This document shows positions 36,987 through 51,494 of a stretch of 64,000 nt of DNA, in pieces. A program made the position numbers and the translations under genes. Under the pieces are notes generated by a model that worked only from the letters and a program-made list of their open reading frames with translations, ran no database searches and had not been told where the DNA came from. The DNA comes from Macrostomum lignano (taxonomy: Eukaryota), in assembly GCA_002269645.1 (NCBI GenBank), contig NIVC01001748.1:124001-188000 (forward strand), read 5' to 3'. Numbering within the stretch: position 1 is the first letter of the stretch; each line of letters begins with the position of its first letter.

Positions 36987-37081
36987 CGCGATAAACTCAT
37001 AGCTGCAGTTCATCATGGCGATGAGCATGTTCAGCAGGACAACAAACGTGATTGCTGAGAACACGCCGTACATCAGTTTGC
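36987..37081 (-). CDS. TRPC: TRPC exon (S6 helix)
   Basis: GKLMYGVFSAITFVVLLNMLIAMMNCSYEFIA; phase 1-0. Confidence 0.93.
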
Positions 37082-37364
37082 CTGCGGAAATGAAGAAAAT
37101 GAACGGTTTTGCCTTTTTGATTGCATATATTACTAGCAGTAGTTTACAAAACCAAGAGCAAATAAATGCACAACTGTGTCAGCTAAAAATGCTGATATAT
37201 ATACCTTAAGCAGCAAACCCGCAGTTGCATTTCTACTGCAATTTCTGTTTCTTCAAATTCCTAGGAATCGAACTTGGGTCTCAATTTCAATCCATAGTAT
37301 TCACGGATGCCCGGTCAAATAGGACTAAACCTTAATGAGCTTAGTTTCAGCTTGGTACAGAATC

Positions 37365-38160
37365 TCTAATCTAATCTAATCTAATCTCTCTCACCCAGGG
37401 TCTCTAGTCTAATCTCACTCTCTTACTCAGAATCTCTAATCTAATCTCACTCAAAGTCTTTAATCTAATCTTACTTAAACGTCTCTAATTTAATCTCACT
37501 TAAACGTCTCTAATCTAATCTCACTGAAAAGTCTCTAATCTAATCTCACCCAAAGTCTCTAATCTAATCTCACCCAAAGTAATATAATCTAATCTCACCC
37601 AAAGTCTCTAATCTAATCTTACCCAAAGTCTCTAATCTAATCTCACCGAAGTCTCTAATCTAATCTTACCCAAAGTCTCTAATCTAATCTCACCGAAGTC
37701 TCTAATCTAATCTTACCCAAAGTCTCTAATCTAATCTCACCGAAGTCTCTAATATAATCTTACCCAAAGTCTCTAATCTAATCTCACCGAAGTCTCTAAT
37801 ATAATCTTACCCAAAGTCTCTAATCTAATTTCAACCGAAGTCTCTAATCTAATTTCATCCAAAGTATCTAATCTAATCTCACCCAAAGTCTCTAATCTAG
37901 TCTCACCCAAGTCTCTAATCTAATCTCACCCAAAGTCTCTAATCTAATCTCACCCAAAGTCTCTAATCTAGTTTCACCCCAAGTCTCTAATCTAATCTCA
38001 CCCAAAGTCTCTAATCTAATCTCACCCAAAGCCTCGAATCTAATCTCACCCCAAGTCTCTAATCTAATCTCACCCAAAGTCTCTAATCTAATCTCACCCA
38101 AAGTCTCTAATCTAATCTCACCCAAAGTCTCTAATCTAATCTGACCCCAAGTCTCTAATC
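37365..38160. repeat. 24-bp minisatellite (TCTCTAATCTAATCTCACCCAAAG)
   Basis: Direct. Confidence 0.9.
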
Positions 38161-38829
38161 TCAATTATTCTCTCATCCACCCCCGCCAACCTAAATCTGC
38201 CACCTACACAATCCTATGATAGAGTAAGTCAATTAGCATGCAACCATTGGCTCTGTGGAAAAACACGAATCATATCTTATTTATTTGTCCCGTCAACCAC
38301 CCAACTGCAAGATTAAAATTAACAGTTACGGCATTTACTTTTATTGGTAGGAAAAAAGTCATCTGAGGACATGAACTGGATGTGCATTGCTTGCTATTAT
38401 TTCTGATAAGTTGCAGAAAAGCACCGGAAACAAAAACTGCTTTTATAAACACTTTAAAGCGTTTACGAAACTAAACAGTAGCTGCGTACAGTCACTGCAA
38501 ACTTTGAACCCTGATCGTATAAGCCTAATCATCCAATATTTATCATCAGAATTTCTCAGTGTCCCTAACCAGACATTGAATATTAGAACACCTTGACAGT
38601 TGAAAATGTCCATCCATGGAGTGGGTTGACCTAGCTTGTTCATTACTAATGTAAACAAAGGGCATGTTAATTATAGCAATCCAAGTTTTAGTGTGACGAA
38701 ACTCGCGTATTTATCAACTTGAACAGGATGACAAGGCCTTATGCAGCGGTGCTATATTTTCCAGTGGTCAGTGCTGGGAATTTCTAGAATATCTTGGCAC
38801 TACGGAAGCTGGTACTGCTTCACAGCGCG

Positions 38830-38928
38830 ATGAAGAACTTGCCTCTGCTGTTGCAACAGTTTTCTGTTATCGTTCTTCTTATCAACGGACTTGTTCTTCA
38901 GCATCATCAAGTGGCTGCTAACTCGTCG
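38830..38928 (+). CDS. Nested Delta-like gene exon 1 (signal peptide)
   Basis: MKNLPLLLQQFSVIVLLINGLVLQHHQVAANSS|gtaagt, phase 0. Confidence 0.7.
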
Positions 38929-38944
38929 GTAAGTTAAACAGACT

Positions 38945-39300
38945 GTCAGAGAGTCAGGGGTGGAGAGAGTCAGGGGTTTAGAGAGTCAGGGGTGGAGAGA
39001 GTCAGGGGTGGAGAGAGTCAGGGGTGAAGAGAGTCAAGGGTGGAGCGAGTCAGGGTGTAGAGAGTCAGGGGTTTAGAGAGTCAGGGGTGGAGAGAGTCAG
39101 GGGTGAAGAGAGTCAAGGGTGGAGCGAGTCAGTGGTAGAGAGAATCAGAGGTAGAGAGAATCAGAGGTAGAGAGAGTCAGAAGTAGAATAGAGTCAGGGG
39201 TGGAGGGAGTCAGGGGTGTAGAGAGTCAAGGGTGGAGAGAGTCAGGGGTAGAATAGAGTCAGGGTTAGTGAGAATCAGAAGTGGAGAAAGTCAGAAGTGG
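38945..39300. repeat. 16-bp minisatellite (GAGAGTCAGGGGTGGA)
   Basis: Direct. Confidence 0.85.
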
Positions 39301-39464
39301 AGAGTCAGGCGAGAGTCAGGAATGAAAATAGTCAGAATGTAAAGTCAGGAGAGTCAGGAGACTGAGATTCAGTGGAAATATGGAATTAGTTAAAAGTCAG
39401 ATTTTTTCTCTGGAATAAATTTGAGACAGAAACAGAGTCTCAGGAGGGAAAAGTGAGACAGGAG

Positions 39465-40245
39465 CTGAGAGTCAGCAGGGAAAGTGAGACTGAGAGTCAG
39501 TCAGCAGGGAAAGTGAGACTGAGAGTCAGTCAGCAGGGAAAAGTGAGACTGAGAGTCAGTCAGCAGGGAAAGTGAGACTGAGAGTCAGTCAGCAGGAAAA
39601 GTGAGACAGGAGCTGAGAGTCAGTCAGCAGGGAAAGTGAGACTGAGAGTCAGTCAGCAGGGAAAAGTGAGACTGAGAGTCAGTCAGCAGGGAAAGTGAGA
39701 CTGAGAGTCAGTCAGCAGGAAAAGTGAGACAGGAGCTGAGAGTCAGTCAGCAGGGAAAGTGAGACTGAGAGTCAGTCAGCAGGGAAAGTGAGACTGAGAG
39801 TCAGTCAGCAGGGAAAGTGAGACTGAGAGTCAGTCAGCAGGGAAAGTGAGACTGAGAGTCAGTCAGCAGGGAAAGTGAGACTGAGAGTCAGTCAGCAGGG
39901 AAAGTGAGACTGAGAGTCAGTCAGCAGGAAAAGTGAGACAGGAGCTGAGAGTCAGTCAGCAGGGAAAGTGAGACTGAGAGTCAGTCAGCAGGGAAAGTGA
40001 GACTGAGAGTCAGTCAGCAGGGAAAGTGAGACTGAGAGTCAGTCAGCAGGGAAAGTGAGACTGAGAGTCAGTCAGCAGGGAAAGTGAGACTGAGAGTCAG
40101 TCAGCAGGGAAAGTGAGACTGAGAGTCAGTCAGCAGGGAAAGTGAGACTGAGAGTCAGTCAGCAGGGAAAGTGAGACTGAGAGTCAGTCAGCAGGGAAAG
40201 TGAGACTGAGAGTCAGTCAGCAGGGAAAAGTGAGACTGAGAGTCT
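39465..40245. repeat. 29-bp minisatellite (AGTCAGCAGGGAAAGTGAGACTGAGAGTC)
   Basis: Direct. Confidence 0.93.
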
Positions 40246-40286
40246 GAGCTAAAATGTTTCTAATTCACACCTGTTGCGTACAATAG

Positions 40287-40411
40287 GCCAGGCTGGTCCT
40301 CCGTCTGATCAGTTATGAAAATTTGGCCAACCTGAGAATCAGCGGAGCTAGCTGCGACTCAATGAGGTCGCCTTGCGATCCGTCCTTTGATGTTACCGCC
40401 ATCTGGGGCGG
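40287..40411 (+). CDS. Nested Delta-like gene exon 2 (start of MNNL/C2-like domain)
   Basis: aatag|ARLVLRLISYENLANLRISGASCDSMRSPCDPSFDVTAIWG|gtgagt, phase 0-2; resembles the Notch-ligand N-terminal pattern LEL-L--F-N--G----G-CCD---CD--F-V. Confidence 0.68.
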
Positions 40412-40550
40412 GTGAGTACATTGAAAACTGTCTATGACCCAAGGTTTGCGCTCCCAATCGACTTTCAAGCCAAAGTATCCTGATTCGATTCCGTGCACGA
40501 CCGAAAAAACAGTATTTTTGAATGAAATTAGATTCAACTTATTCATTCAG

Positions 40551-40671
40551 ACCAGACATTCGAGTCACTAGCCCCTGTCTAAGCAACGAGGAGCGAGTCT
40601 ACTTCCCAGACGAAGTGTCAAGACTGCCAGAGCTAGCCAAACCAATCAAAAGTCGAGACGGTCCGATGCCC
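40551..40671 (+). CDS. Nested Delta-like gene exon 3
   Basis: ttcag|...SPCLSNEERVYFPDEVSRLPELAKPIKSRDGPMP|gtaaga, phase 2-0. Confidence 0.62.
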
Positions 40672-40744
40672 GTAAGATTTTTATCATTTTTCATTTAGAA
40701 TAAATTTTTAGAGGCTATGAAATAGGTGTCTAAATTCAGCTGAA

Positions 40745-41055
40745 CAATAACAAATGGGGTGGGCGCAGTGAGGGGCAAGAAAAAAGGGGGGAGTGGAAAT
40801 AACGGGGGAGTGGGGGCGCAGTGAGGGTAGGAAATAACGGAGGAGTGGGGGCGCAGTGAGGGGCAAGAAATAACGGAGGAGTGGGGCGCAGTGAGAGTAG
40901 GAAATAACGGGGGAGTGGTGGGCGCAGTGAGGGTAAGAAATAACGGGGGAGTGGGGGCGCAGTGAGGGGCAAGAAATAACGGGGGGTGGGGGCGCAGTGA
41001 GGGTAGGAAATAACGGGGGAGTGGGGGCGCAGTGAGGGGCAAGAAATAACGGTGG
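40745..41055. repeat. About 35-bp G-rich minisatellite (GGGGCGCAGTGAGGG..AGAAATAACGGGGGAGT)
   Basis: Direct. Confidence 0.88.
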
Positions 41056-41104
41056 AATGGGGTGGGCTATCTGAGGACACTTTCAATGCCTCTTTCTTTT
41101 ACAG

Positions 41105-41379
41105 AGCTGGGCCGAGGTCCGCATTAGCATCTCAGACTGTCTGTACTCTTCGCCAACAGATTTAATAGCAAGGTTCCAATTGAATATCACCATCCCAATC
41201 GCCGAGTTTATCCCTACTAAGACGACTACTACCGTTGCCATGGATACCAACAGTAGTTTAAGCGTTAATCAAGATATTGGAAGCTTTAGTAAGGGCCAGC
41301 TGGTTCTTCACCCATCCTCAATGAAAGGTAATCCAGCCGTACTGTCGATGCAGCCAATTCATTCTCCAGAGTCAATCAG
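41105..41379 (+). CDS. Nested Delta-like gene exon 4
   Basis: ttttacag|SWAEVRISISDCLYSSPTDLIARF...|gtgaga, phase 0-2; resembles MNNL W-GTFSLIIEAW---DDLI-R. Confidence 0.68.
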
Positions 41380-41469
41380 GTGAGAAAAAGCTTTGGATGT
41401 CGAAGCAAAGTTACTGACTACGAGACACCAGCAGTTTAAAAATATTTATTTTTTTTCCAAAAAAAACAG

Positions 41470-41597
41470 AATGCGCATCTCAGTCTGGATCGAGTGCAGT
41501 CCCGGATTCTACGGCAGAGGCTGCGACGTGCGCTGCGAACCGCAGCGAGGCTGCTGCTGCGATTCGGAGGGTCTGTTGCGATGCGATGAAACAATTG
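41470..41597 (+). CDS. Nested Delta-like gene exon 5 (DSL-like domain)
   Basis: MRISVWIECSPGFYGRGCDVRCEPQRGCCCDSEGLLRCDETI; phase 2-1. Confidence 0.72.
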
Positions 41598-41639
41598 GTG
41601 AGATCGGTGTGCTATGTTTTTAGCTAGGCTACTCTGTGG

Positions 41640-41860
41640 GGGTGATGGGCGGAGTGAGGTGGGTGGTCTTGAGGGGTAGGAATCGACGCGGAGTGAGGTG
41701 TGTGGTCTTGAGGGTAGGAATCGACGCGGAGTGAGGTGGGTGGTCTTGAGGGTAGGAATCGACGCGGAGTGAGGTGTGTGGTCTTGAGGGTAGGAATCGA
41801 CGCGGAGTGAGGTGGGTGGTCTTGAGGGGTAGGAATCGACGCGGAGTGAGGTGGGTGCAT
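41640..41860. repeat. 38/39-bp minisatellite
   Basis: GAGGTGGGTGGTCTTGAGGGTAGGAATCGACGCGGAGT units. Confidence 0.88.
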
Positions 41861-42088
41861 TCTGAGGGGTAGAATCAGTTAAATCAGGGGTTGGCAAGCT
41901 TTTTAATTTAAGGGCTAGATATAGAATCTAGCACATGACTGCGGACTAGAGAGGGGAGAAAGAAGGGGAGAAAGGAAAGTAGATGAAAGACCCAAGGGCG
42001 CGATAGAGAGGCTTCGCGGGCCGGAGGTTGTCGACTCCTAAGTAGAATAACGAGTAGTTCATACGTAGAAATTTTCATATTTCCGCAG

Positions 42089-42192
42089 ACTGCTCAGCCC
42101 AGCTGGCCACGAAACCGGCATTCCCAACCAGCGGACCCGGAGGCGCGGGATCAAGCAATGGCAATTCCGACAATCGAAACAGAGATGAAGCT
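42089..42192 (+). CDS. Nested Delta-like gene exon 6 (last Cys and Gly/Ser/Asn stalk)
   Basis: ccgcag|(D)CSAQLATKPAFPTSGPGGAGSSNGNSDNRNRDEA|gtgagt, phase 1-0. Confidence 0.7.
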
Positions 42193-42266
42193 GTGAGTTG
42201 AAGATTTGTGTAAATTCGTTGAAGTCAGTCGCAACAGTTCAACGTTAAAAAATTTTTTCGCTTCAG

Positions 42267-42370
42267 ACCAGCGTTCTTTTCATAGCCGTGATGGCCTCCT
42301 CAATGACCAGCATTTTCATATTGGCTGTCATTGCTCTTGTGGCCATCAAAATGTGCAAAGCGTCGGAGAG
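42267..42370 (+). CDS. Nested Delta-like gene exon 7 (transmembrane helix)
   Basis: cttcag|TSVLFIAVMASSMTSIFILAVIALVAIKMCKASE|gtgaga, phase 0-2. Confidence 0.75.
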
Positions 42371-42384
42371 GTGAGAGCGAAGCG

Positions 42385-43557
42385 CCTCTGTAGCTGGCGC
42401 CCCTCTGTAGCTGGCGCCCCTCTGTAACTGGCGCCCCCCTCTGTAGCTGGTGCCCCTCTGTAGCTGGCGCCCCTCTGTAGCTGGCGCCCCCCTCTGTAGC
42501 TGGCGCCCCTCTGTAGCTGGCGCTCCTTCTCTGTAGCTGGCGCTCCCTCTGTAGCTGGCGCCCCCTCTGTAGCTGGTATCCCCTCTGTAGCTGGCGCCCC
42601 CTCTGTAGCTAGCGCCCCTCTGTAGCTGGCGCCCCCTCTGTAGCTGGCGCCCCTCTGTAGCTGGCGCCCCTCTGTAGCTGGCGCCCCTCTGTAGCTGGCG
42701 CCCCTCTGTAGCTGGCGCCCCCCCTCTGTAGCTGGCGCCTCCCTCTGTAGCTGGCGCTCCCTCTGTAGCTGGCCACCCTCTGTAGCTGGCGCTCCTTCTC
42801 TGCAGCTGGCGCCTTCCTCTGTAGCTGGCATCCTCTCTGTAGCTGGCGCCCCTCTGTAGAGGGCGCCCCCTCTGTAGCTGGCGCCCCCTCTGCAGCTGGC
42901 GCCCCTCTGTAGCTGGCGCCCCTCTGTAGCTGGCGCTCCCTCTGTAGCTGGCGCCCCTCTGTAGCTGGCGCCCCCTCTGTAGCTGGCCACCCTCTGTAGC
43001 TGGCGCTCCTTCTCTGTAGCTGGCGTCCTCTCTGTAGCTGGCATCCTCTCTGTAGCTGGCATCCTCTCTGTAGCTGGCATCCTCTCTGTAGCTGGCGCCC
43101 CTCTGTAGAGGGCGCCCCCTCTGTAGCTGGCGCCCCCTCTGTAGCTGGCATCCCCTCTGTAGCTGGCGCCCCCTCTGCAGCTGGCGCCCCTCTGCAGCTG
43201 GCGCCCCTCTGTAGCTGGCGCCCTTCTGCAGCTGGCGCTCCTTCTGTAGCTGGCGCCCCTCTGTAGCTGGCGCCCCTCTGTAGCTGGCGCCCCCCTCTGT
43301 AGCTGGCGCCCCTCTGCAGCTGGCGCCCCTCTGTAGCTGGCGCCCCTCTGTAGCTGGCGCCCCTCTGTAGCTGGCGCCCCTCTGCAGCTGGCGCCCCTCT
43401 GTAGCTGGCGCCCCTCTGTAGCTGGCGCCCCTCTGCAGCTGGCGCTCCTCTGTAGCTGGCGCCCCTCTGTAGCTGGCGCCCCTCTGTAGCTGGCGCCCCT
43501 CTGCAGCTGGCGCCCCTCTGTAGCTGGCGCCCCTCTGTAGCTGGCGCCCCTCTGCAG
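42385..43557. repeat. 17/18-bp minisatellite (CTGGCGCCCCTCTGTAG)
   Basis: Direct. Confidence 0.93.
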
Positions 43558-43600
43558 CGGATGCGCACATGTAGCTACTGGATCTCAATTTAAATTTCAG

Positions 43601-43991
43601 CAACGCCCTTATCATCAGCCGCCTGGTGTCTCAAGACGCTTCAGTGTCATCCGTAGACGCAGACAGCACCGTGCTGAACCTCAGACGTCAGCAGAATCAC
43701 TACCAGCTGCAGCACCAGAATCTGGGCTACTTCAATCCAGCCTCGTACAACACTCTCACCTCCCAGGTGACCAATTTGTCAACTATTGTATCCACCTCGG
43801 CGGTGCCTGCTAATAACAGGACCGACTCTGGGGTGTACGAGGACCCTCAGGAGCCGCCAGCTGGTGACCCCAGCGAGACGCCGCCGCCGCCGCCCCCGCC
43901 GCCGCGGCCGCTGCAGTCCAGACAGAGCGAAGACATTCAAAGGATGCCTCAGTCGAAGAGTTACAGTCGCAAAGCTGCTGCCAAAGAGTAG
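43601..43991 (+). CDS. Nested Delta-like gene exon 8 (cytoplasmic tail)
   Basis: tttcag| acceptor in phase 2, joins ORF 43626-43991; Tyr motifs (GVYEDP), poly-Pro, stop TAG. Confidence 0.72.
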
Positions 43992-44371
43992 CACCCAAAT
44001 TCCTTAGAGTTCTCATGACTACAGACTGTTTAATCTGTCAAATCTCAAAATCTCAGATTTCGTGTATTGATAAATTGATCAATGTTCTTCTATCTAGAAC
44101 AAAAACAGCAAAACCAACCTTGCGTTTTTGCACTTCAATTATGCGTATATATGTGCCGAAAATTGTTAACTGTATACTCGAAGCTTCGAAAATATTTATG
44201 ATAAAAATTAATTTGTTATAAATGCTGCCTAAGTTTATTGTTGTCAATAAATCTAGTGAATAATTTTTTTTTTCATAATTTGATTGTGCCTCGTACCTTG
44301 TACCTTGTACCTTGTACCTTGTACCTTGTACATTGTACATTGTAAACAAAAGCCTTCCATTATGAACTCAC

Positions 44372-44472
44372 CAACAAACTCGGTGAATGAGTGCTGATAC
44401 TCCAGATCTGTGTTGCTCAGCTCAACCAGACCGTAGGTTGACCAGTAGAGCGACTGCGTGATCTCAAACAGA
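44372..44472 (-). CDS. TRPC: TRPC exon (pore helix and filter)
   Basis: NLFEITQSLYWSTYGLVELSNTDLEYQHSFTEFVG; phase 2-1; too short for the ORF track. Confidence 0.92.
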
Positions 44473-47035: not shown

Positions 47036-47281
47036 TGTAGTGACTTGGTTTGTGTTGTGTGGGGTGCTGGGGGTTGCTGCGTACACTTTACCGTCGTACC
47101 CTTTAACTCTCTCCTTCGCTTGTTCTTTTGTGCGTACGTGCACGTGACTAATATGTCTATTTTACAGTCCCCAAATTATTGATCGGTTAAAATACTATTT
47201 CGACAAATACATATATGAATGATTTTATCATGCTATCGCATAAGCATCTTTCTGCCACGCAAACTAAGTGAAGTCTTTACA
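47036..47281 (+). repeat. 5' LTR of element 2
   Basis: Identical to 51249-51494 by inspection. Confidence 0.95.
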
Positions 47282-47282
47282 G

Positions 47283-47293
47283 TGGCGACGAGG
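47283..47293 (+). promoter_or_regulatory. PBS, tRNA-Ser(GCU) type
   Basis: TGGCGACGAGG, with the gag ATG 1 nt downstream. Confidence 0.78.
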
Positions 47294-47294
47294 C

Positions 47295-50200
47295 ATGAGC
47301 TTGGTTGGCTCAATAGAACCCTATGAAGAGGGCACTGAAAAGTGGATTCAGTACCAAGAAAGACTGGAGCAGTATTTTGAGGCCAATGATATCAAAGAAG
47401 AGAAGAAGCGTGCCGTTCTCCTTAGCGTCTGCGGCAAGAAGACGTATCAGTTGCTTGCCAGCCTGCTGTCTCCAGAGTCGCCTGCCCAGTCCAGCTACAC
47501 AGCGATCTGCGCTAAGCTGAAAGAGCATTTCGACCCTGAGCCCCCTGAGATCGTGCTACGTTACCGTTTCTACTCCAGGAGTCGCCAAGTTGGTGAATCG
47601 ATTGCGGATTTTCTCGCGGATCTTCGCAGACTGGCACGGGACTGCAACTTCGGCGGCAGCCTGAATGACATGATCAGAGACCGGCTCGTGCTTGGCATCG
47701 CTGACGACAACATCCAGCGAAGGCTTCTTTCGGAGAAGAAGCTGACTCTCGAAACCGCAATATCTCTGGCGCAAGCTCAAGCGTCGGCCGCTGAGGGCAA
47801 TCTTCTCGTGATGAAATCTGCGAGTCAGGACGCCTTTCAGATAGCACACCAGCCACAGTCCACTAGACGATGTTTTCGTTGCCGGTCACAGCGGCACGTC
47901 GCGGCGAAGTGCCCGTTTGCTGACAAGAAGTGCTTCAACTGTTCGAAGGTGGGCCATACGGCTGCTGCCTGTAAGTCTCCTGCGGGTTCGAATCGTCGCA
48001 TGGACCATAATGTGAGAGAGGTTGAGGTCGATGAAGAAGAGGCACATTCGCTGCACGTGATGGCTGAACGGTGTGGGAAGATTCCACCCATCGAGACCAC
48101 GGTCATCATCGAAGGCACGCCAGTTCGGATGGAGGTCGACACGGGTGCATCTGTCTCGCTCATATCTTCAGAAACATTTCGCTCAGAGCTGCGGGAAGGA
48201 CCAAAGCTAGAACCTGCCAACACTAAGCTGCGCACCTACTCAGGAGAGCCGGTCCCCCTGCTAGGTAAAATTACCGTCCGAGTGCAAGCTGCCGGAGCTG
48301 CCAAGGAGCTTCCACTGCTCGTAGTCGAGGGCTCTGGTTCGAACCTGATCGGCCGTGACTGGCTGGCATGTTTGCCGCTGGACTGGAGCAGCATCAACCA
48401 GGTGCGAAAAGACAGTGAGCACCCTGGAATCCGCGCCCTGCTGGACCAGTATGCCGAGGTTTTCGAGACGGGACTCGGCAAGTACAACGGACCGCCTGTG
48501 CAGCTGCATCTGAAAACTGGGGCCCGGCCTCGATTTTTCAAGGCACGCAACGTCCCGTTTGCTCTTAAGACTAAGGTGGAGGCTCAGCTCGACAAGGAAA
48601 TTGAGCAAGGTGTGCTCAGACCAGTCAACAACTCGGACTACGCCTCGCCGATTGTGCCAGTGCTCAAGTCGGACGGTTCAATACGCATCTGTGCCGACTT
48701 CAAACAAACGGTAAATCTCTGTGTTGAACCTGACAAATATCCGCTACCGAGAATCGAAGAGCTTTTTGCTAAGCTGGCAGGTGGAAAAAATTTACGAAGC
48801 TCGACTTGTCGCAAGCCTATTCTCAACTGCCACTGGACGAAGCAGCCCAAGAGATTTGTACAATTAATACGTCCAAAGGCCTTCTGCGCTACACCCGTCT
48901 GCCTTTTGGAGTTGCTCCGGCCGTCGGTATTTTCCAACGACACATGGACAATCTGCTGCAGTCGATTCCGCATGTCGCCTGTTTTATCGACGATCTGATT
49001 ATCACCGGTGTTGACGACGAAAGTCACTTGCGCTCACTAGAGTCAGTGCTCAAGAAATTGCACCAAAGCGGACTGCGCTGCGGCCTGAGCAAGTGCGACT
49101 TCATGCAGGACAGTGTCAGCTATCTGGGCCACCGGATAGACGCTGACGGTCTGCATCCGCTACCGGACAAGGTTCGTGCCATCGCCGACGCTCCAGCACC
49201 ACGAGACGTGACACAGCTTCGCAGTTTTCTTGGACTTGTCAACTATTACGGGAAGTTCATGCCCAACTTGTCCGCGGAGCTGTCGCCGCTGCATCGTCTG
49301 CTCAACCAAGGTGCCCAGTGGCGCTGGGGCACTCAACAGGAGACCGCATTTAGGAAGTGCAAGTCGCTTCTCAGCAAAGCGCCGGTCCTCGCGCACTTCG
49401 ACGAAAGTAAGCCGCTGATCCTGGAGTGCGACGCGTCGCCCTACGGCGTCGGAGCGGTCATCAGTCATCGGATTGATGGTATCGATCAGCCGATTGCGTT
49501 CGCTTCGCGCTCTTTGCACGATGCTGAGACCAGGTACTCCCAGTTGGACAAAGAGGCTCTGGCGGTCGTTTTCGGAGTAAAGCGGTTTCATGCGTATCTG
49601 TACGGCCGGAAGTTTACACTGATCAGCGACCACAAACCGCTATTGGGTCTGCTACACGAGTCCAAGCCGATTCCAGCAATGGCATCCGGTCGAATTCAAA
49701 GGTGGGCGCTCATCCTGGCAGGCTACAGCTACACGATGGAGCACCGATCAGGTCGGTCGCTGCTCCGTGCGGACGCGCTGAGTCGACTGCCGCTGCCAGA
49801 GAGACCAGCAAAGGCACCGACACCAGCCGATGTGGTGCTAGTCATGGACACGCTTGATGAGGGACCAGTGACTGCCGGAGACATTCGAGCTTTGACTAGA
49901 ACGGACCCGATCCTGTCCAAGGTGCTGCAGTTTACCGAGTCTGGCTACTGGCCCGAGCGAGTAACTCAAGAGCTACAGCCGTTCAAAAATCGGGCTAATC
50001 AGCTGAGTGTCCAAGATGGCTGTCTCCTCTGGGGCACAAGAGTGGTGATACCGCAAGCTGGCCGCTCGGCGGTTCTGCAGTGCCTGCACCAAGGACACCA
50101 GGGCGCCTCTAGAACGAAGGCGCTCGCCCGCAGTTTTTTCTGGTGGCCAAAGCTGGATGAATCCATTGAGCACCTGTCCAGTGCGTGCTCCGAGTGCCGT

Positions 50201-51157
50201 GAGCTGCTGAAGTCACCGGCGCCGGTTCCGCTGCACCCATGGGCATTGCCGGACAGACCCTGGTCGCGTCTTCATCTCGACTTTGCTGGTCCGGTAGAAG
50301 GAAAAATGCTTCTGGTGATCGTGGACGCTCATTCGAAGTGGATGGAAGTTCATGTAATGATGTCGACGACTTCAACGGCCACGATTCAGAGACTGCGGCA
50401 GAGTTTCGCTACTCACGGTCTGCCAGACATCGTCGTTACGGACAACGGGCCAAATCTAGTCAGCGAAGAGATGAGCGAATTTCTACGGAAAAACGGCATT
50501 CGGCACGTGCGAACTGCACCGTATCACCCAGCATCCAACGGCCAGGCGGAGCGCGCGGTGCAAACGCTGAAGAAGTCGCTGGCCAAGCAGAAAGGCGGCT
50601 CGCTCGAAGACCGAGTAGCGCGGTTCCTGCTGACATACCGCGTGACGCCACATGCCACGACTGGCACGCCGCCGTGCGAGCTGCTGATGGGAAGGCGACT
50701 GCGCTCTCTGCTCGATCGAGTGCGTCCCGACGTGCCGGCCAGGGTTGCAGTGCAGCAAGCGATGCAAAAGCAGCATCACGACGCCAACGCTCACGATCGC
50801 CGCATTGAGGTCGGCGATGCCGTGGTTGCCAGGGACTTCGCTGATGACAGCAGATGGAAGCCGGCGGTGGTGACTGCCAGCTCTGGAGCAGCGTCGTTCT
50901 CGTGCCAGTTTGATGACGGCCGGGAGGTCCAACGGCACATCGACCAAGTTCGCAGACCCGCGGATGCTGTACCGGCTGGCGAAGTTCCCGAGGCTGAGCC
51001 GGTCGCTGATCCGCCGGAAGATCCGCCAGCAGCGGCCGGCGCAGCTGGTGCCCCCGGCCTGGCGGACGCCTGCGACGCCACGAATGCGAGCGATTTGGCG
51101 TTGCCGCGGCGCTCGACCAGGATCCGAACTGAGCCTAATCGACTGTGTTACCAGTGA
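47295..51157 (+). CDS. Gag-Pol polyprotein with one 1-nt frame break at about 48790
   Basis: Two CCHC knuckles, VDTGAS, FIDD, CDASPYG, HHCC/DDE; frame changes at GGAAAAAATTTACG (A6 where A7 would give GKKFTKLDLSQ). Confidence 0.9.
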
Positions 51158-51239
51158 CTGTGATTCCGTTATTTAGTGCTCTTTGAGTTGCGGACTAAAT
51201 AGTTTCTTTTATTTCCTGTTCCCTGCTTCTGCAGTTGTT

Positions 51240-51248
51240 GGGGAGGAG
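51240..51248 (+). promoter_or_regulatory. Polypurine tract of element 2
   Basis: GGGGAGGAG directly before the 3' LTR. Confidence 0.8.
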
Positions 51249-51494
51249 TGTAGTGACTTGGTTTGTGTTGTGTGGGGTGCTGGGGGTTGCTGCGTACACT
51301 TTACCGTCGTACCCTTTAACTCTCTCCTTCGCTTGTTCTTTTGTGCGTACGTGCACGTGACTAATATGTCTATTTTACAGTCCCCAAATTATTGATCGGT
51401 TAAAATACTATTTCGACAAATACATATATGAATGATTTTATCATGCTATCGCATAAGCATCTTTCTGCCACGCAAACTAAGTGAAGTCTTTACA
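51249..51494 (+). repeat. 3' LTR of element 2
   Basis: Identical to 5' LTR; followed by TSD. Confidence 0.95.

What the first reader, a model, noticed from the sequence alone, without database searches (positions are those of the whole stretch)
38830..43991. Hidden EGF-less Delta/DSL-like membrane protein nested antisense inside a TRPC intron
Seen: eight short exons with GT-AG introns and matching phases (0,2,0,2,1,0,2) splice into a 1347-nt ORF (448 aa). It has a signal peptide, an MNNL/C2-like domain, a DSL-like Cys domain, a short G/S/N stalk, a TM helix and a tail with YEDP and poly-Pro. Known: canonical Delta/Serrate ligands carry EGF repeats after DSL and an RDDxFGH-type loop that contacts Notch. 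Here EGF repeats are absent and that loop is replaced by EPQRGCCC, with two extra Cys. Inference: a divergent ligand-like protein that could be a Notch decoy or cis-inhibitor, or a receptor with another partner. It lies wholly between the TRPC pore exon and S6 exon, so the two genes may interfere transcriptionally.
Basis: partly seen in the sequence, partly recalled or inferred. Interest (0 to 1): 0.75.

Follow-up and report, generated by a model that had tools for sequence, protein, structure and literature searches.

The report
EGF-less Notch-ligand-like gene in TRPC intron
A real flatworm (Macrostomum lignano) gene encodes a membrane protein that keeps only the C2-DSL "head" of a Delta/Jagged Notch ligand, has lost every EGF repeat and the usual Notch-contact residues, and has stayed nested backwards in the same intron of a TRPC ion-channel gene through an old gene duplication.

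Summary
Eight GT-AG exons (38830-43991, + strand; phases 0,2,0,2,1,0,2) splice into a 1347-nt ORF of 448 aa. It is not "hidden": it is identical to GenBank PAA64468.1 (BOX15_Mlig009932g1, Macrostomum lignano), a model derived from transcripts, which UniProt auto-names "DSL domain-containing protein". It lies in the pore-to-S6 intron of a TRPC4/5-like gene on the opposite strand.

The protein belongs to a small family found only in M. lignano, with two subfamilies about 28% identical. Both have signal peptide, C2/MNNL-like domain, shortened DSL, short stalk, TM helix and tail, with no EGF repeats. Homology to the Notch-ligand head is supported by profile-versus-PDB hits to DLL1, Serrate and Delta only, by hhalign (96.7%, with shuffle controls), and by Foldseek (top 24 hits all ligand C2-DSL). 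Pfam thresholds are not met.

Recent copies show omega of about 0.29. A tail motif, VYE[DT]P[QE]EP, is one of the two most conserved segments.

The diverged paralogue sits in the same intron of a paralogous TRPC (host dS about 0.96), so the nesting is ancestral. Function is untested.

The parts
38830..38928 (+). Exon 1: start codon and signal peptide (aa 1-33)
   Evidence: hydrophobic segment at about residues 4-24. An AG sits 4 nt upstream of the ATG (38824-38825).
40287..40411 (+). Exon 2: first strands of the C2/MNNL-like domain, with conserved C56 and C63. It is 125 nt in both subfamilies.
   Evidence: hhalign of the N-domain alone against the canonical MNNL profile gives P=7e-5, and 0 of 400 shuffles reach the real score. 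The 'ASCDS..CDP' segment is one of the two most conserved windows between subfamilies A and B.
40551..40671 (+). Exon 3: C2/MNNL-like domain, including conserved C84
   Evidence: C84 aligns with the invariant canonical 'PC' cysteine
41105..41379 (+). Exon 4: C2/MNNL-like core strand (SWAEVRISISDC, C127) plus a T/S-rich insert specific to subfamily A, which is predicted disordered
   Evidence: pLDDT below 50 for ectodomain residues 120-173
41470..41597 (+). Exon 5: last C2 strand (MRISVWIE) and DSL-like cysteines C216, C225, C229, C237 and C245
   Evidence: the profile hits only DLL1, Serrate and Delta, at this junction; DSL alone 95%
41537..41560 (+). Loop EPQRGCCC (aa 230-237), which replaces the canonical RPRDDxFGHxxC. 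It is 4 residues shorter, and C235 and C236 are extra cysteines found only in subfamily A.
   Evidence: Notch-face residues are listed in PMC3415683.
42089..42192 (+). Exon 6: last DSL cysteine (C251) and the G/S/N-rich stalk (about 35 aa)
   Evidence: The phase-1 intron before this exon is absent from subfamily B.
42267..42370 (+). Exon 7: transmembrane helix (aa about 287-312; 42273-42350)
43601..43991 (+). Exon 8: cytoplasmic tail of about 132 aa and the stop codon
43833..43859 (+). Tail motif VYEDPQEPP (aa 397-405), followed by the poly-Pro/PxxPxR run at about 43881-43910
   Evidence: It lies within one of only two 12-residue windows with at least 7/12 identity between subfamilies.
44246..44251 (+). 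AATAAA, the likely poly(A) signal of the nested gene, about 120 nt from the host pore-exon splice donor
   Evidence: Read directly from the sequence. Its use as a poly(A) signal was not verified.
44372..44472 (-). Host TRPC pore-helix/selectivity-filter exon (…SLFEITQSLYWSTYGLVELSNTDLEYQHSFTEFV)
36987..37081 (-). Host TRPC S6 exon (…KLMYGVFSAITFVVLLNMLIAMMNCSYEFIA)
37082..44371 (-). Host TRPC intron (7.3 kb) that contains the whole nested gene
   Evidence: The same intron hosts the subfamily B gene at loci L003, L004 and L005.

Best explanation
This is a genuine, transcribed, selectively maintained gene of Macrostomum lignano. It encodes a type I membrane protein descended from a Delta/Serrate/Jagged-type Notch ligand. 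The protein keeps only the ligand 'head': an N-terminal C2/MNNL beta-sandwich followed by a DSL module with its six cysteines but shortened C3-C4 and C5-C6 loops. The head is mounted directly on a flexible stalk of about 35 residues, a TM helix and a disordered tail of about 130 residues. All EGF repeats are gone, and so are the DSL residues that canonical ligands use to contact Notch EGF11.

Those steps are shown. The following steps are inferred. The protein is probably no longer a canonical trans-activating Notch ligand. It most likely acts as a fast-evolving, lineage-specific cell-surface recognition or signalling molecule. In that reading, its C2-DSL head binds a partner, either an EGF-repeat protein through a re-modelled surface or a membrane through the C2 domain. 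Its output would run through the cytoplasmic tail, whose VYE[DT]P[QE]EP motif (a pYxxP-type SH2-docking or Abl-type site) and PPPxPxR motif (a class II SH3 ligand) have resisted otherwise rapid divergence.

The gene has been nested antisense in the pore-to-S6 intron of a TRPC channel gene since before the duplication that produced the two subfamilies. The nesting is therefore ancestral and stably tolerated. Whether the two genes are functionally coupled is unknown.
For: Gene reality: the model was rebuilt exactly and is identical to transcript-derived GenBank PAA64468.1. Five loci keep the ORF open with homologous intron positions and phases. Omega is 0.28-0.30 among the subfamily B copies, binomial P=8e-4.

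Ligand-head homology: the family profile against all PDB sequences hits only DLL1 (E=0.003), Serrate (0.0096) and Delta (0.02), at the C2/DSL junction, while the DLL1 EGF repeats score negative. hhalign against 21 canonical MNNL-DSL sequences gives 96.7%, P=4e-10, over 146 colinear columns. The real score of 66.9 compares with a maximum of 24 for column shuffles and 40 for block shuffles. The N-domain alone gives P=7e-5, and 0 of 400 shuffles reach its score. MAFFT places 8 Cys columns as invariant across the family and the canonical ligands. The AF2 model (pLDDT 60, core 70-87) retrieves only Notch-ligand C2-DSL structures as its top 24 Foldseek hits, followed by generic C2 domains.

EGF loss: the TM exon follows the DSL and stalk, and the introns hold no Cys-rich exon. 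The paralogue at 28% identity has the same architecture.

Notch face lost: 0 of 5 of F199, R201, R203, D205 and F207 are kept in this protein, and 2 of 5 in subfamily B.

Tail function: the motif lies in one of the two most conserved windows of the protein.

Ancestral nesting. Host exons have dS 0.96 and dN 0.044, against nested-gene dN 0.89.
Against: Pfam MNNL and DSL do not reach threshold, and P0001 gives no hit at all.

By sequence alone, MNNL support covers only about the first 35 residues of the N-domain.

The AF2 model is of medium confidence, and its MSA contained canonical ligands, so the Foldseek result is partly circular. The single-sequence model failed (pLDDT 39).

The family profile is shallow (Neff about 1.6).

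No binding, localisation or expression-pattern data exist.

The SH2/SH3 reading of the tail rests on general motif knowledge and was not tested.

EGF-less LAG-2 is reported to remain functional in C. elegans (cited in PMC11843878), so loss of EGF repeats alone does not exclude Notch signalling. Subfamily B retains 2 of the 5 DSL face residues.
Confidence: 0.6

Rival explanations
1. It is still a Notch-pathway component: a minimal ligand, a cis-inhibitor or a decoy. In this reading it binds Notch through its C2-DSL head, using a co-evolved interface.
For: C2 and DSL are the two principal Notch-contact modules of canonical ligands (structures retrieved; PMC5538765 abstract). LAG-2 lacking its EGF repeats is reported to remain functional (PMC11843878). 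DLK1, another truncated ligand relative, can modulate Notch (PMC2268666 abstract). The short stalk would favour same-membrane (cis) encounters; this last point is inference.
Against: All five conserved DSL face residues, which are required for both trans-activation and cis-inhibition, are missing, and the loop that carries them is shortened by 4 residues. The C5-C6 'GWxG' loop is also deleted. The ectodomain has diverged very fast between paralogues (dN about 0.9), which is unlike canonical ligands. The tail carries pYxxP and PxxP-type motifs. It lacks the PDZ-binding end that PMC3415683 describes for some vertebrate ligands, and, from my own knowledge, the lysine-rich ubiquitination tail typical of ligands.
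Confidence: 0.25
2. The nested gene and its TRPC host are functionally coupled. The coupling could be antisense transcriptional interference, or co-expression in the same cells, and that coupling would explain why the nesting has been retained.
For: The same intron of two paralogous TRPC genes hosts the two subfamilies, despite host dS of about 1. The nested 3' end lies about 120 nt from the host pore-exon splice donor.
Against: Nested genes are normally inherited passively with their host, so conservation of position is expected without any coupling. The distances to the flanking host exons differ widely between loci: 0.48 and 1.36 kb in L003, against 1.75 and 0.38 kb here. No expression data could be obtained.
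Confidence: 0.12
3. It is a decaying remnant or an annotation artefact, i.e. a truncated Delta pseudogene or a chance ORF among minisatellites.
For: The protein is lineage-restricted, has no Pfam hit, lies in a repeat-rich locus, and one sister copy (P0024) has a frameshifted tail.
Against: The model is transcript-derived. The ORF and intron phases are conserved in 5 loci and across 28%-identity paralogues. Omega is about 0.29, P=8e-4. All 10 structural cysteines and a tail motif are conserved. The P0024 frameshift is a 1-nt change in a C-run, which is a typical long-read assembly error.
Confidence: 0.04
4. The Cys module is only a generic EGF/laminin-type repeat, and the upstream region is not C2-like.
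For: Pfam DSL is below threshold, and the DSL fold itself resembles a truncated EGF pair (PMC3415683).
Against: The profile scores the DSL of DLL1 at +20.6 bits, but every DLL1 EGF repeat scores negative. The C-x8-C-x3-C spacing and the YYG/FYG motif are DSL-specific. There is no EGF Pfam hit. The N-domain aligns with MNNL independently of the DSL. The fold search returns C2 domains.
Confidence: 0.03

Closest known systems
Canonical DSL Notch ligands (Delta/DLL1/DLL4, Serrate/Jagged1/2)
   Same: Type I topology. N-terminal C2/MNNL domain followed directly by a DSL module with six cysteines. The C1-C2 and C2-C3 spacings are identical (8 and 3 residues), and the Y-Y/F-G and C-x-P motifs are present. 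The alignment is colinear and the predicted fold is shared.
   Different: There are no EGF repeats at all, whereas known ligands have 16, 5-9, or at minimum 1 (PMC3415683). The C3-C4 loop is shortened from 11 to 7 residues and lacks RDDxFGH. The C5-C6 loop is shortened and lacks GWxG. None of the 5 Notch-face residues is kept. The tail has pYxxP and PxxPxR-type motifs. The protein is fast-evolving and restricted to this lineage.
C. elegans DSL family (LAG-2, APX-1, DSL-1) and engineered EGF-less LAG-2
   Same: These are reduced ligands. DSL-1 has a single EGF (PMC3415683). The LAG-2 EGF repeats are reported to be dispensable for function (PMC11843878). So a head-only ligand is mechanistically conceivable.
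   Different: Natural nematode members still carry at least one EGF repeat according to the review read here. There is no detectable sequence relationship beyond the DSL. The nematode DSL domains are functional Notch binders, whereas the contact loop here is replaced.
DLL3 (divergent vertebrate Delta-like)
   Same: It is a ligand-family member with a degenerate DSL, which domain scans score as absent (PMC12166595). From my own knowledge (Ladi et al. 2005), it does not trans-activate Notch and acts only in cis.
   Different: DLL3 keeps its EGF repeats. The protein here keeps the six-Cys DSL scaffold but loses the EGF repeats.
DLK1/DLK2
   Same: These are truncated relatives of Notch ligands that can still modulate Notch (PMC2268666 abstract).
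   Different: The truncation is the opposite one. DLK proteins keep the EGF repeats and lack MNNL and DSL. This family keeps MNNL and DSL and lacks the EGF repeats.
Nested intronic genes (host-guest gene pairs)
   Same: A complete protein-coding gene lies on the opposite strand inside one intron of a larger gene.
   Different: Here the same guest family occupies the same intron of two paralogous hosts, while having diverged about 20 times faster than the host at non-synonymous sites.

Membership tests
DSL (Delta/Serrate/LAG-2) Notch ligands | N-terminal MNNL/C2 domain (PF07657) | tested here: inconclusive
   There is no Pfam hit. The family profile aligns with the canonical MNNL profile: N-domain alone P=7e-5, with 0 of 400 shuffles as high, and full colinear alignment at 96.7%. 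The AF2 model gives a C2 beta-sandwich and Foldseek returns ligand C2-DSL and then generic C2 domains, but the MSA included canonical ligands. Homology is therefore likely, but the curated threshold is not met.
DSL (Delta/Serrate/LAG-2) Notch ligands | DSL domain (PF01414/PROSITE PS51051): six Cys, spacing C-x8-C-x3-C-x11-C-x7-C-x8-C | tested here: inconclusive
   Six conserved Cys have spacing 8, 3, 7, 7(9), 5(4). Pfam gives no hit for this protein and E=0.006 (17.2 bits, below the gathering score of 24.2) for paralogue P0018. Profile versus PDB gives E=0.003-0.02, to DSL ligands only. hhalign on the DSL alone gives 95%. UniProt labels all five proteins 'DSL domain-containing'. This is a shortened variant of the domain.
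DSL (Delta/Serrate/LAG-2) Notch ligands | Tandem EGF-like repeats after the DSL (at least 1 in all described members) | tested here: not met
   The DSL is followed by a 35-aa low-complexity stalk and then the TM helix. There is no EGF Pfam hit and no Cys-rich exon in the introns. Paralogues have the same architecture.
DSL (Delta/Serrate/LAG-2) Notch ligands | Conserved Notch-binding face of the DSL (human Jagged-1 F199, R201, R203, D205, F207) | tested here: not met
   The aligned residues are R, E, Q, G and a deleted position, so 0 of 5 are kept. Subfamily B keeps F and R, so 2 of 5. The face residues are as defined in PMC3415683.
DSL (Delta/Serrate/LAG-2) Notch ligands | Type I single-pass membrane topology | tested here: met
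   There is an N-terminal hydrophobic signal and one TM segment at about residues 287-312.
DSL (Delta/Serrate/LAG-2) Notch ligands | Binds and activates (or cis-inhibits) Notch; endocytosis driven by Mib/Neuralized | not testable with these tools
   This needs binding and reporter assays.
TRPC channels (host gene) | S5-pore-S6 and TRP box (EWKFAR) with TRPC-type sequence | tested here: met
   The concatenated window exons hit TRPC4, TRPC5 and TRP-gamma structures at E about 1e-70. One window exon matches Ion_trans. The paralogous host in L004 is annotated with Ank, TRP_2 and Ion_trans.
Nested antisense intronic gene | The entire transcription unit lies inside one intron of a host gene, on the opposite strand | tested here: met
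   The CDS at 38830-43991 (+) and the putative poly(A) signal at 44246 lie inside host intron 37082-44371 (-). UTR ends were not mapped.

The most novel reading that the evidence does not exclude
The C2-DSL module has been re-used in flatworms for a Notch-independent receptor system, and it is evolutionarily locked to a TRPC channel. In this reading, guest and host have been kept as a unit since before the subfamily split because they are co-regulated or act together, for example in the same sensory cells. The DSL-derived protein would signal through a phosphotyrosine/SH3-adaptor tail. That would be a new function for the Notch-ligand head and an example of a functionally coupled host-nested gene pair.
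Probability: 0.12. Interest if true: 0.7.

Novelty: new variant of a known kind. Interest (0 to 1): 0.45.

Why it matters
Every described Delta/Serrate/LAG-2 protein carries EGF repeats after its DSL domain. Here a naturally occurring family under selection consists only of the C2-DSL head on a stalk, with the canonical Notch-contact loop rewritten. This shows that the head can be maintained as an autonomous module. It also gives a natural test case for what C2-DSL can do without EGF repeats: lipid binding, a new partner, or a minimal Notch interaction.

The ectodomain evolves fast, but a tail motif is strongly conserved, which suggests the protein acts as a receptor rather than a ligand.

The same guest family is retained in the same TRPC intron across an old duplication. 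That gives a dated example of how stable a nested gene can be, and a tractable pair for testing host-guest transcriptional interplay in a transgenic flatworm model.

If the protein turns out simply to bind Notch weakly, or to have a redundant role, the finding is a modest, lineage-specific curiosity.

Tried and rejected
- A Pfam scan of the spliced protein gave no MNNL, DSL or EGF hit, only noise (PRIMA1, cadherin tail).
- phmmer against PDB found nothing.
- A single-sequence AF2 model was unusable, with pLDDT 39.
- An exhaustive phmmer of the ectodomain against 1.84 billion representatives found only M. lignano proteins. The one outside hit, P0019, is a low-complexity repeat protein.
- A profile search of the 5.8-billion-protein database likewise returned only M. 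lignano.
- The many UniProt hits named WAP, CUB, Rho-GAP, Elicitin, GRANULINS and so on (P0002-P0017, P0025, P0026) are chimeric or frame-shifted gene models from the older ML2 assembly of the same loci. They are not additional subfamilies.
- No hidden EGF exons were found in the introns. The only Cys-rich translations there are minisatellite artefacts.
- No paper text mentions any of the five Mlig identifiers. They are also absent from the supplementary files held for three M. lignano papers, so no expression pattern was obtained.
- dN/dS between the two subfamily A copies is uninformative, because there is one substitution plus a 1-nt indel.
- dS between subfamilies A and B of the nested gene is saturated.

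Full report
OBSERVATION. The exons are 38830-38928, 40287-40411, 40551-40671, 41105-41379, 41470-41597, 42089-42192, 42267-42370 and 43601-43991 on the + strand. All seven introns are GT...AG, phases are 0,2,0,2,1,0,2, and the CDS is 1347 nt, giving 448 aa. The introns are almost entirely minisatellites: a 16-mer x22, a 29-mer x26, a 36-mer x7.6, a 38-mer x5.4 and a 17-mer x67. A hydropathy scan finds two hydrophobic segments, an N-terminal signal and a TM helix at about residues 287-312. No Cys-rich exon is hidden in the introns.

IDENTITY OF THE LOCUS. The protein is 100% identical over its full length to GenBank PAA64468.1, 'hypothetical protein BOX15_Mlig009932g1' of the free-living flatworm Macrostomum lignano. 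UniProt auto-names it 'DSL domain-containing protein'. The locus is on scaffold NIVC01001748.1 of assembly GCA_002269645.1. That GenBank annotation was produced solely from genome-guided RNA-seq and de novo transcript assemblies plus TransDecoder (Wudarski et al. 2017, PMC5730564). An identical eight-exon model is therefore indirect transcript support for all seven junctions. The gene is not 'hidden', but I found no paper that mentions it or its paralogues.

HOST GENE. Minus-strand translations show a TRPC channel gene. The S4-S5 exon is at about 52.2-52.7 kb. The pore exon is 44372-44472 ('SLFEITQSLYWSTYGLVEL...HSFTEFV'). The S6 exon is 36987-37081 ('YGVFSAITFVVLLNMLIAMMNCSYEFIA'). The TRP box (EWKFAR) is at about 35.0 kb. 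The concatenated exons hit TRPC4, TRPC5 and TRP-gamma structures at E about 1e-70.

WHAT THE PROTEIN IS. An exhaustive phmmer of the ectodomain against 1.84 billion representative proteins finds only M. lignano sequences. Among them is P0018 (404 aa; BOX15_Mlig032942g1, with near-identical copies Mlig019093g1 and Mlig014464g1). P0018 is only about 28% identical but aligns end to end and has the same architecture: signal peptide, N-domain, six-Cys module ('CEQFYYGQDCSKFCRPLPGLSC...'), stalk, TM helix and tail, with no EGF repeats. P0018 gives a sub-threshold Pfam DSL hit (E=0.006). The family therefore has two subfamilies. Subfamily A comprises the window gene plus P0024, and subfamily B has three copies. 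The many other UniProt hits are chimeric or frame-shifted models of the same loci from the older ML2 assembly.

A profile of the family ectodomain searched against all 177,635 distinct PDB sequences returns exactly three hits: human DLL1 (E=0.003), Drosophila Serrate (0.0096) and Drosophila Delta (0.02). Each aligns at the last C2 strand plus the DSL. The EGF repeats of DLL1 score negative.

I then collected real canonical ligands from the database, using N-terminal DLL1, Delta and JAG1 sequences only as bait. I trimmed 21 of them to MNNL-DSL and ran hhalign. The result was probability 96.7%, P=4.4e-10, over 146 colinear columns, from the first beta-strand to the 'CRP/CEP' of the DSL. In the controls, the real score of 66.9 compares with 14.3 +/- 2.9 (max 24.1) for 100 column shuffles and 26.4 +/- 3.5 (max 40.5) for 100 block shuffles. 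The reversed profile gives 10%. The DSL half alone gives 95%.

The N-domain alone against the canonical N-domain alone gives 62.6%, P=7e-5, score 32.6. None of 400 shuffles exceeds 24.9. That local match covers only about the first 35 residues ('LVLRLISYEN...C...CDPSF' against 'FELxLxxFxN...CC...CxTFF'). MAFFT independently reproduces the register, with eight cysteine columns invariant across all 23 sequences and the strand motifs aligned.

AF2 with that alignment gives mean pLDDT 60 and pTM 0.54. The beta-core and DSL blocks reach 70-87, and two loops are disordered, including a T/S-rich insert specific to subfamily A. Foldseek against PDB returns Notch-ligand C2-DSL structures as its top 24 hits (Jagged-1 4cc0 at E=1.5e-6, then Jagged-2, Serrate, DLL4, Delta and DLL1; TM 0.45-0.53). 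Generic C2 domains follow at E about 1e-2. Because canonical ligands were in the MSA, this fold result shows compatibility and is not independent proof. The sequence-profile results are the independent evidence.

My conclusion is that the ectodomain is a divergent C2/MNNL plus DSL head of a Notch ligand. The alternative, a generic EGF/laminin Cys repeat with no C2 upstream, is rejected at the level testable here.

WHAT IS MISSING. Canonical DSL spacing is C-x8-C-x3-C-x11-C-x7-C-x8-C. The family has 8, 3, 7, 7(9) and 5(4). The 4-residue deletion removes the RDDxFGH segment, and the C5-C6 deletion removes 'GWxG'. The review of Chillakuri et al. (PMC3415683) states that Jagged-1 F199, R201, R203, (D205) and F207 form the conserved DSL face. 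It also states that mutating them abolishes both trans-activation and cis-inhibition. The window protein has R, E, Q, G and a deleted position there, so 0 of 5 are kept. Subfamily B keeps F and R, so 2 of 5.

SELECTION AND HISTORY. I derived exact exon chains for all five loci. Subfamily A has 8 exons with phases 0,2,0,2,1,0,2. Subfamily B has 7 exons with phases 0,2,0,2,0,2. The first four introns are homologous, and exon 2 is 125 nt in both. Subfamily A has one extra phase-1 intron just after the DSL. Among the three B copies, dS is 0.03-0.055 and dN is 0.010-0.016, giving omega of 0.28-0.30. That is 14 non-synonymous against 16 synonymous changes where 3:1 is expected, binomial P=8e-4. This indicates purifying selection.

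All B copies lie on the opposite strand inside an annotated ion-channel gene. The host in L004 is 1028 aa with Ank, TRP_2 and Ion_trans domains. tblastn places the nested gene between the pore and S6 exons of that TRPC paralogue, which is the same intron as in the window. The host exons of the A and B loci are 79-97% identical in protein, with dS of about 0.96 and dN of about 0.044. The nested genes have dN of about 0.89. The host-guest pair was therefore duplicated as a unit long ago, well before the recent duplications that give copies at least 95% identical (PMC5730564). Since then the guest has evolved about 20 times faster than the host at non-synonymous sites.

Between subfamilies, only two 12-residue windows reach at least 7/12 identity. 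One is the N-domain 'A.CDS..CDP'. The other is the tail 'R[TP][DE]S[GD]VYE[DT]P[QE]E', which is followed by the conserved PPPxPxR and a C-terminal 'QR.P.S[KR]S[YF]S[KR]'.

MECHANISM. Shown: this is a selected, transcribed type I membrane protein with a ligand-type C2-DSL head, no EGF repeats, a re-modelled DSL contact loop and a conserved tail motif. Inferred: it is probably not a canonical activating ligand, and on present knowledge of the DSL face probably not a classical cis-inhibitor either. I favour a neofunctionalised recognition or signalling receptor. In that reading the head binds a new partner, or a membrane, since C2 domains of Notch ligands bind lipid (PMC5538765 abstract). The VYExP motif would act as an Abl-type substrate or pYxxP SH2-docking site, and PPPxPxR as a class II SH3 ligand. 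These two motif assignments come from my own knowledge of consensus motifs and were not tested.

The Notch-modulator rival keeps about 25%. C2 and DSL are the main receptor-contact modules, EGF-less LAG-2 is reported to be functional (PMC11843878), and interfaces can co-evolve. Functional coupling with the TRPC host is possible but is not required to explain the conserved nesting.

COMPARISON AND NOVELTY. The closest known kind is the DSL ligand family. This protein fails two defining features, EGF repeats and the Notch face, and meets the domain models only below curated thresholds. It is therefore best described as a new, lineage-restricted variant derived from that family and not as a member in good standing. 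DLL3 (degenerate DSL, EGF repeats kept) and DLK1/2 (EGF repeats kept, no MNNL or DSL) are truncations of a different kind. C. elegans DSL-1, with one EGF, is the nearest natural reduction. The gene is already deposited as a hypothetical protein, but I found no description of its EGF-less architecture, its loss of the Notch face or its conserved nesting in TRPC.

VERDICT. Interest is moderate (0.45). This is a well-supported oddity of the Notch-ligand family with an unusually stable nested-gene arrangement, but no functional data exist and only one species is represented in the databases searched.

Noticed in passing
window 47036-51494 (+), in the TRPC S5-to-pore intron: An LTR retrotransposon of Ty3/gypsy type, with two 246-nt LTRs that are 100% identical (47036-47281 and 51249-51494). 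It has long open gag-protease (576 aa) and RT-RNaseH-integrase (783 aa) ORFs. It is absent from the sister locus L002 and from the B loci, so the insertion is very recent. One old UniProt model (P0004) fuses the nested gene's tail to this element's gag.
   Followed up: partly
L003 10001-14578, L004 10001-14188, L005 10001-15345: The 28%-identical paralogue subfamily (404 aa) is nested antisense in the same pore-to-S6 intron of a paralogous TRPC gene. Host exons have dS of about 0.96, and the guest gene evolves about 20 times faster than the host.
   Followed up: yes
L002 (P0024), last exon; corresponds to window about 43890-43900: The sister copy of the window gene differs by a 1-nt deletion in a C-run of the (CCG)n poly-Pro tract. 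This shifts the frame of the last ~35 codons and removes the family-conserved C-terminal motif. It is either a long-read homopolymer error or a real frameshifted copy.
   Followed up: partly
window 38948-39304, 39470-40244, 40796-41062, 41649-41857, 42385-43558; also 36.2-37.0 kb, 44.7-46.2 kb, 53.4-55.4 kb: Almost every intron of both the nested gene and the TRPC host is filled with a different minisatellite (units of 16-38 nt, up to 67 copies), with strong strand-compositional skew. Copy numbers differ between the duplicated loci.
   Followed up: no
window 27-59 kb (-) versus GenBank annotation: The TRPC host gene is not among the called genes at this locus in the GenBank annotation. Its paralogue at the B locus is annotated (1028 aa). 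The annotation pipeline removed transcripts that overlap repeats (PMC5730564), which may explain the gap.
   Followed up: no
window 38824-38829: An AG preceded by a short pyrimidine-rich stretch lies 4 nt upstream of the ATG (…ctgcttcacag|cgcgATG). About 39% of M. lignano genes are SL trans-spliced, so this could be a spliced-leader acceptor.
   Followed up: no
window 44284-44344: A (TTGTACC)n microsatellite occupies most of the ~120 nt between the nested gene's AATAAA and the splice donor of the host pore exon.
   Followed up: no
window about 11.5-15.5 kb: Antisense translations here resemble those of the 47-51 kb retrotransposon (for example '...CLKSAQMR..PSD..TGTIG'). This suggests a second, related retroelement copy upstream of the TRPC gene.
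   Followed up: no
UniProt/ML2-assembly proteins P0002-P0017, P0025, P0026: Older gene models of these loci are chimeric or frame-shifted. They carry misleading automatic names (WAP, CUB, Rho-GAP, Elicitin-like, GRANULINS, LRRNT, P-type domain-containing). One of them reads into the antisense strand of the TRPC S5 exon.
   Followed up: partly
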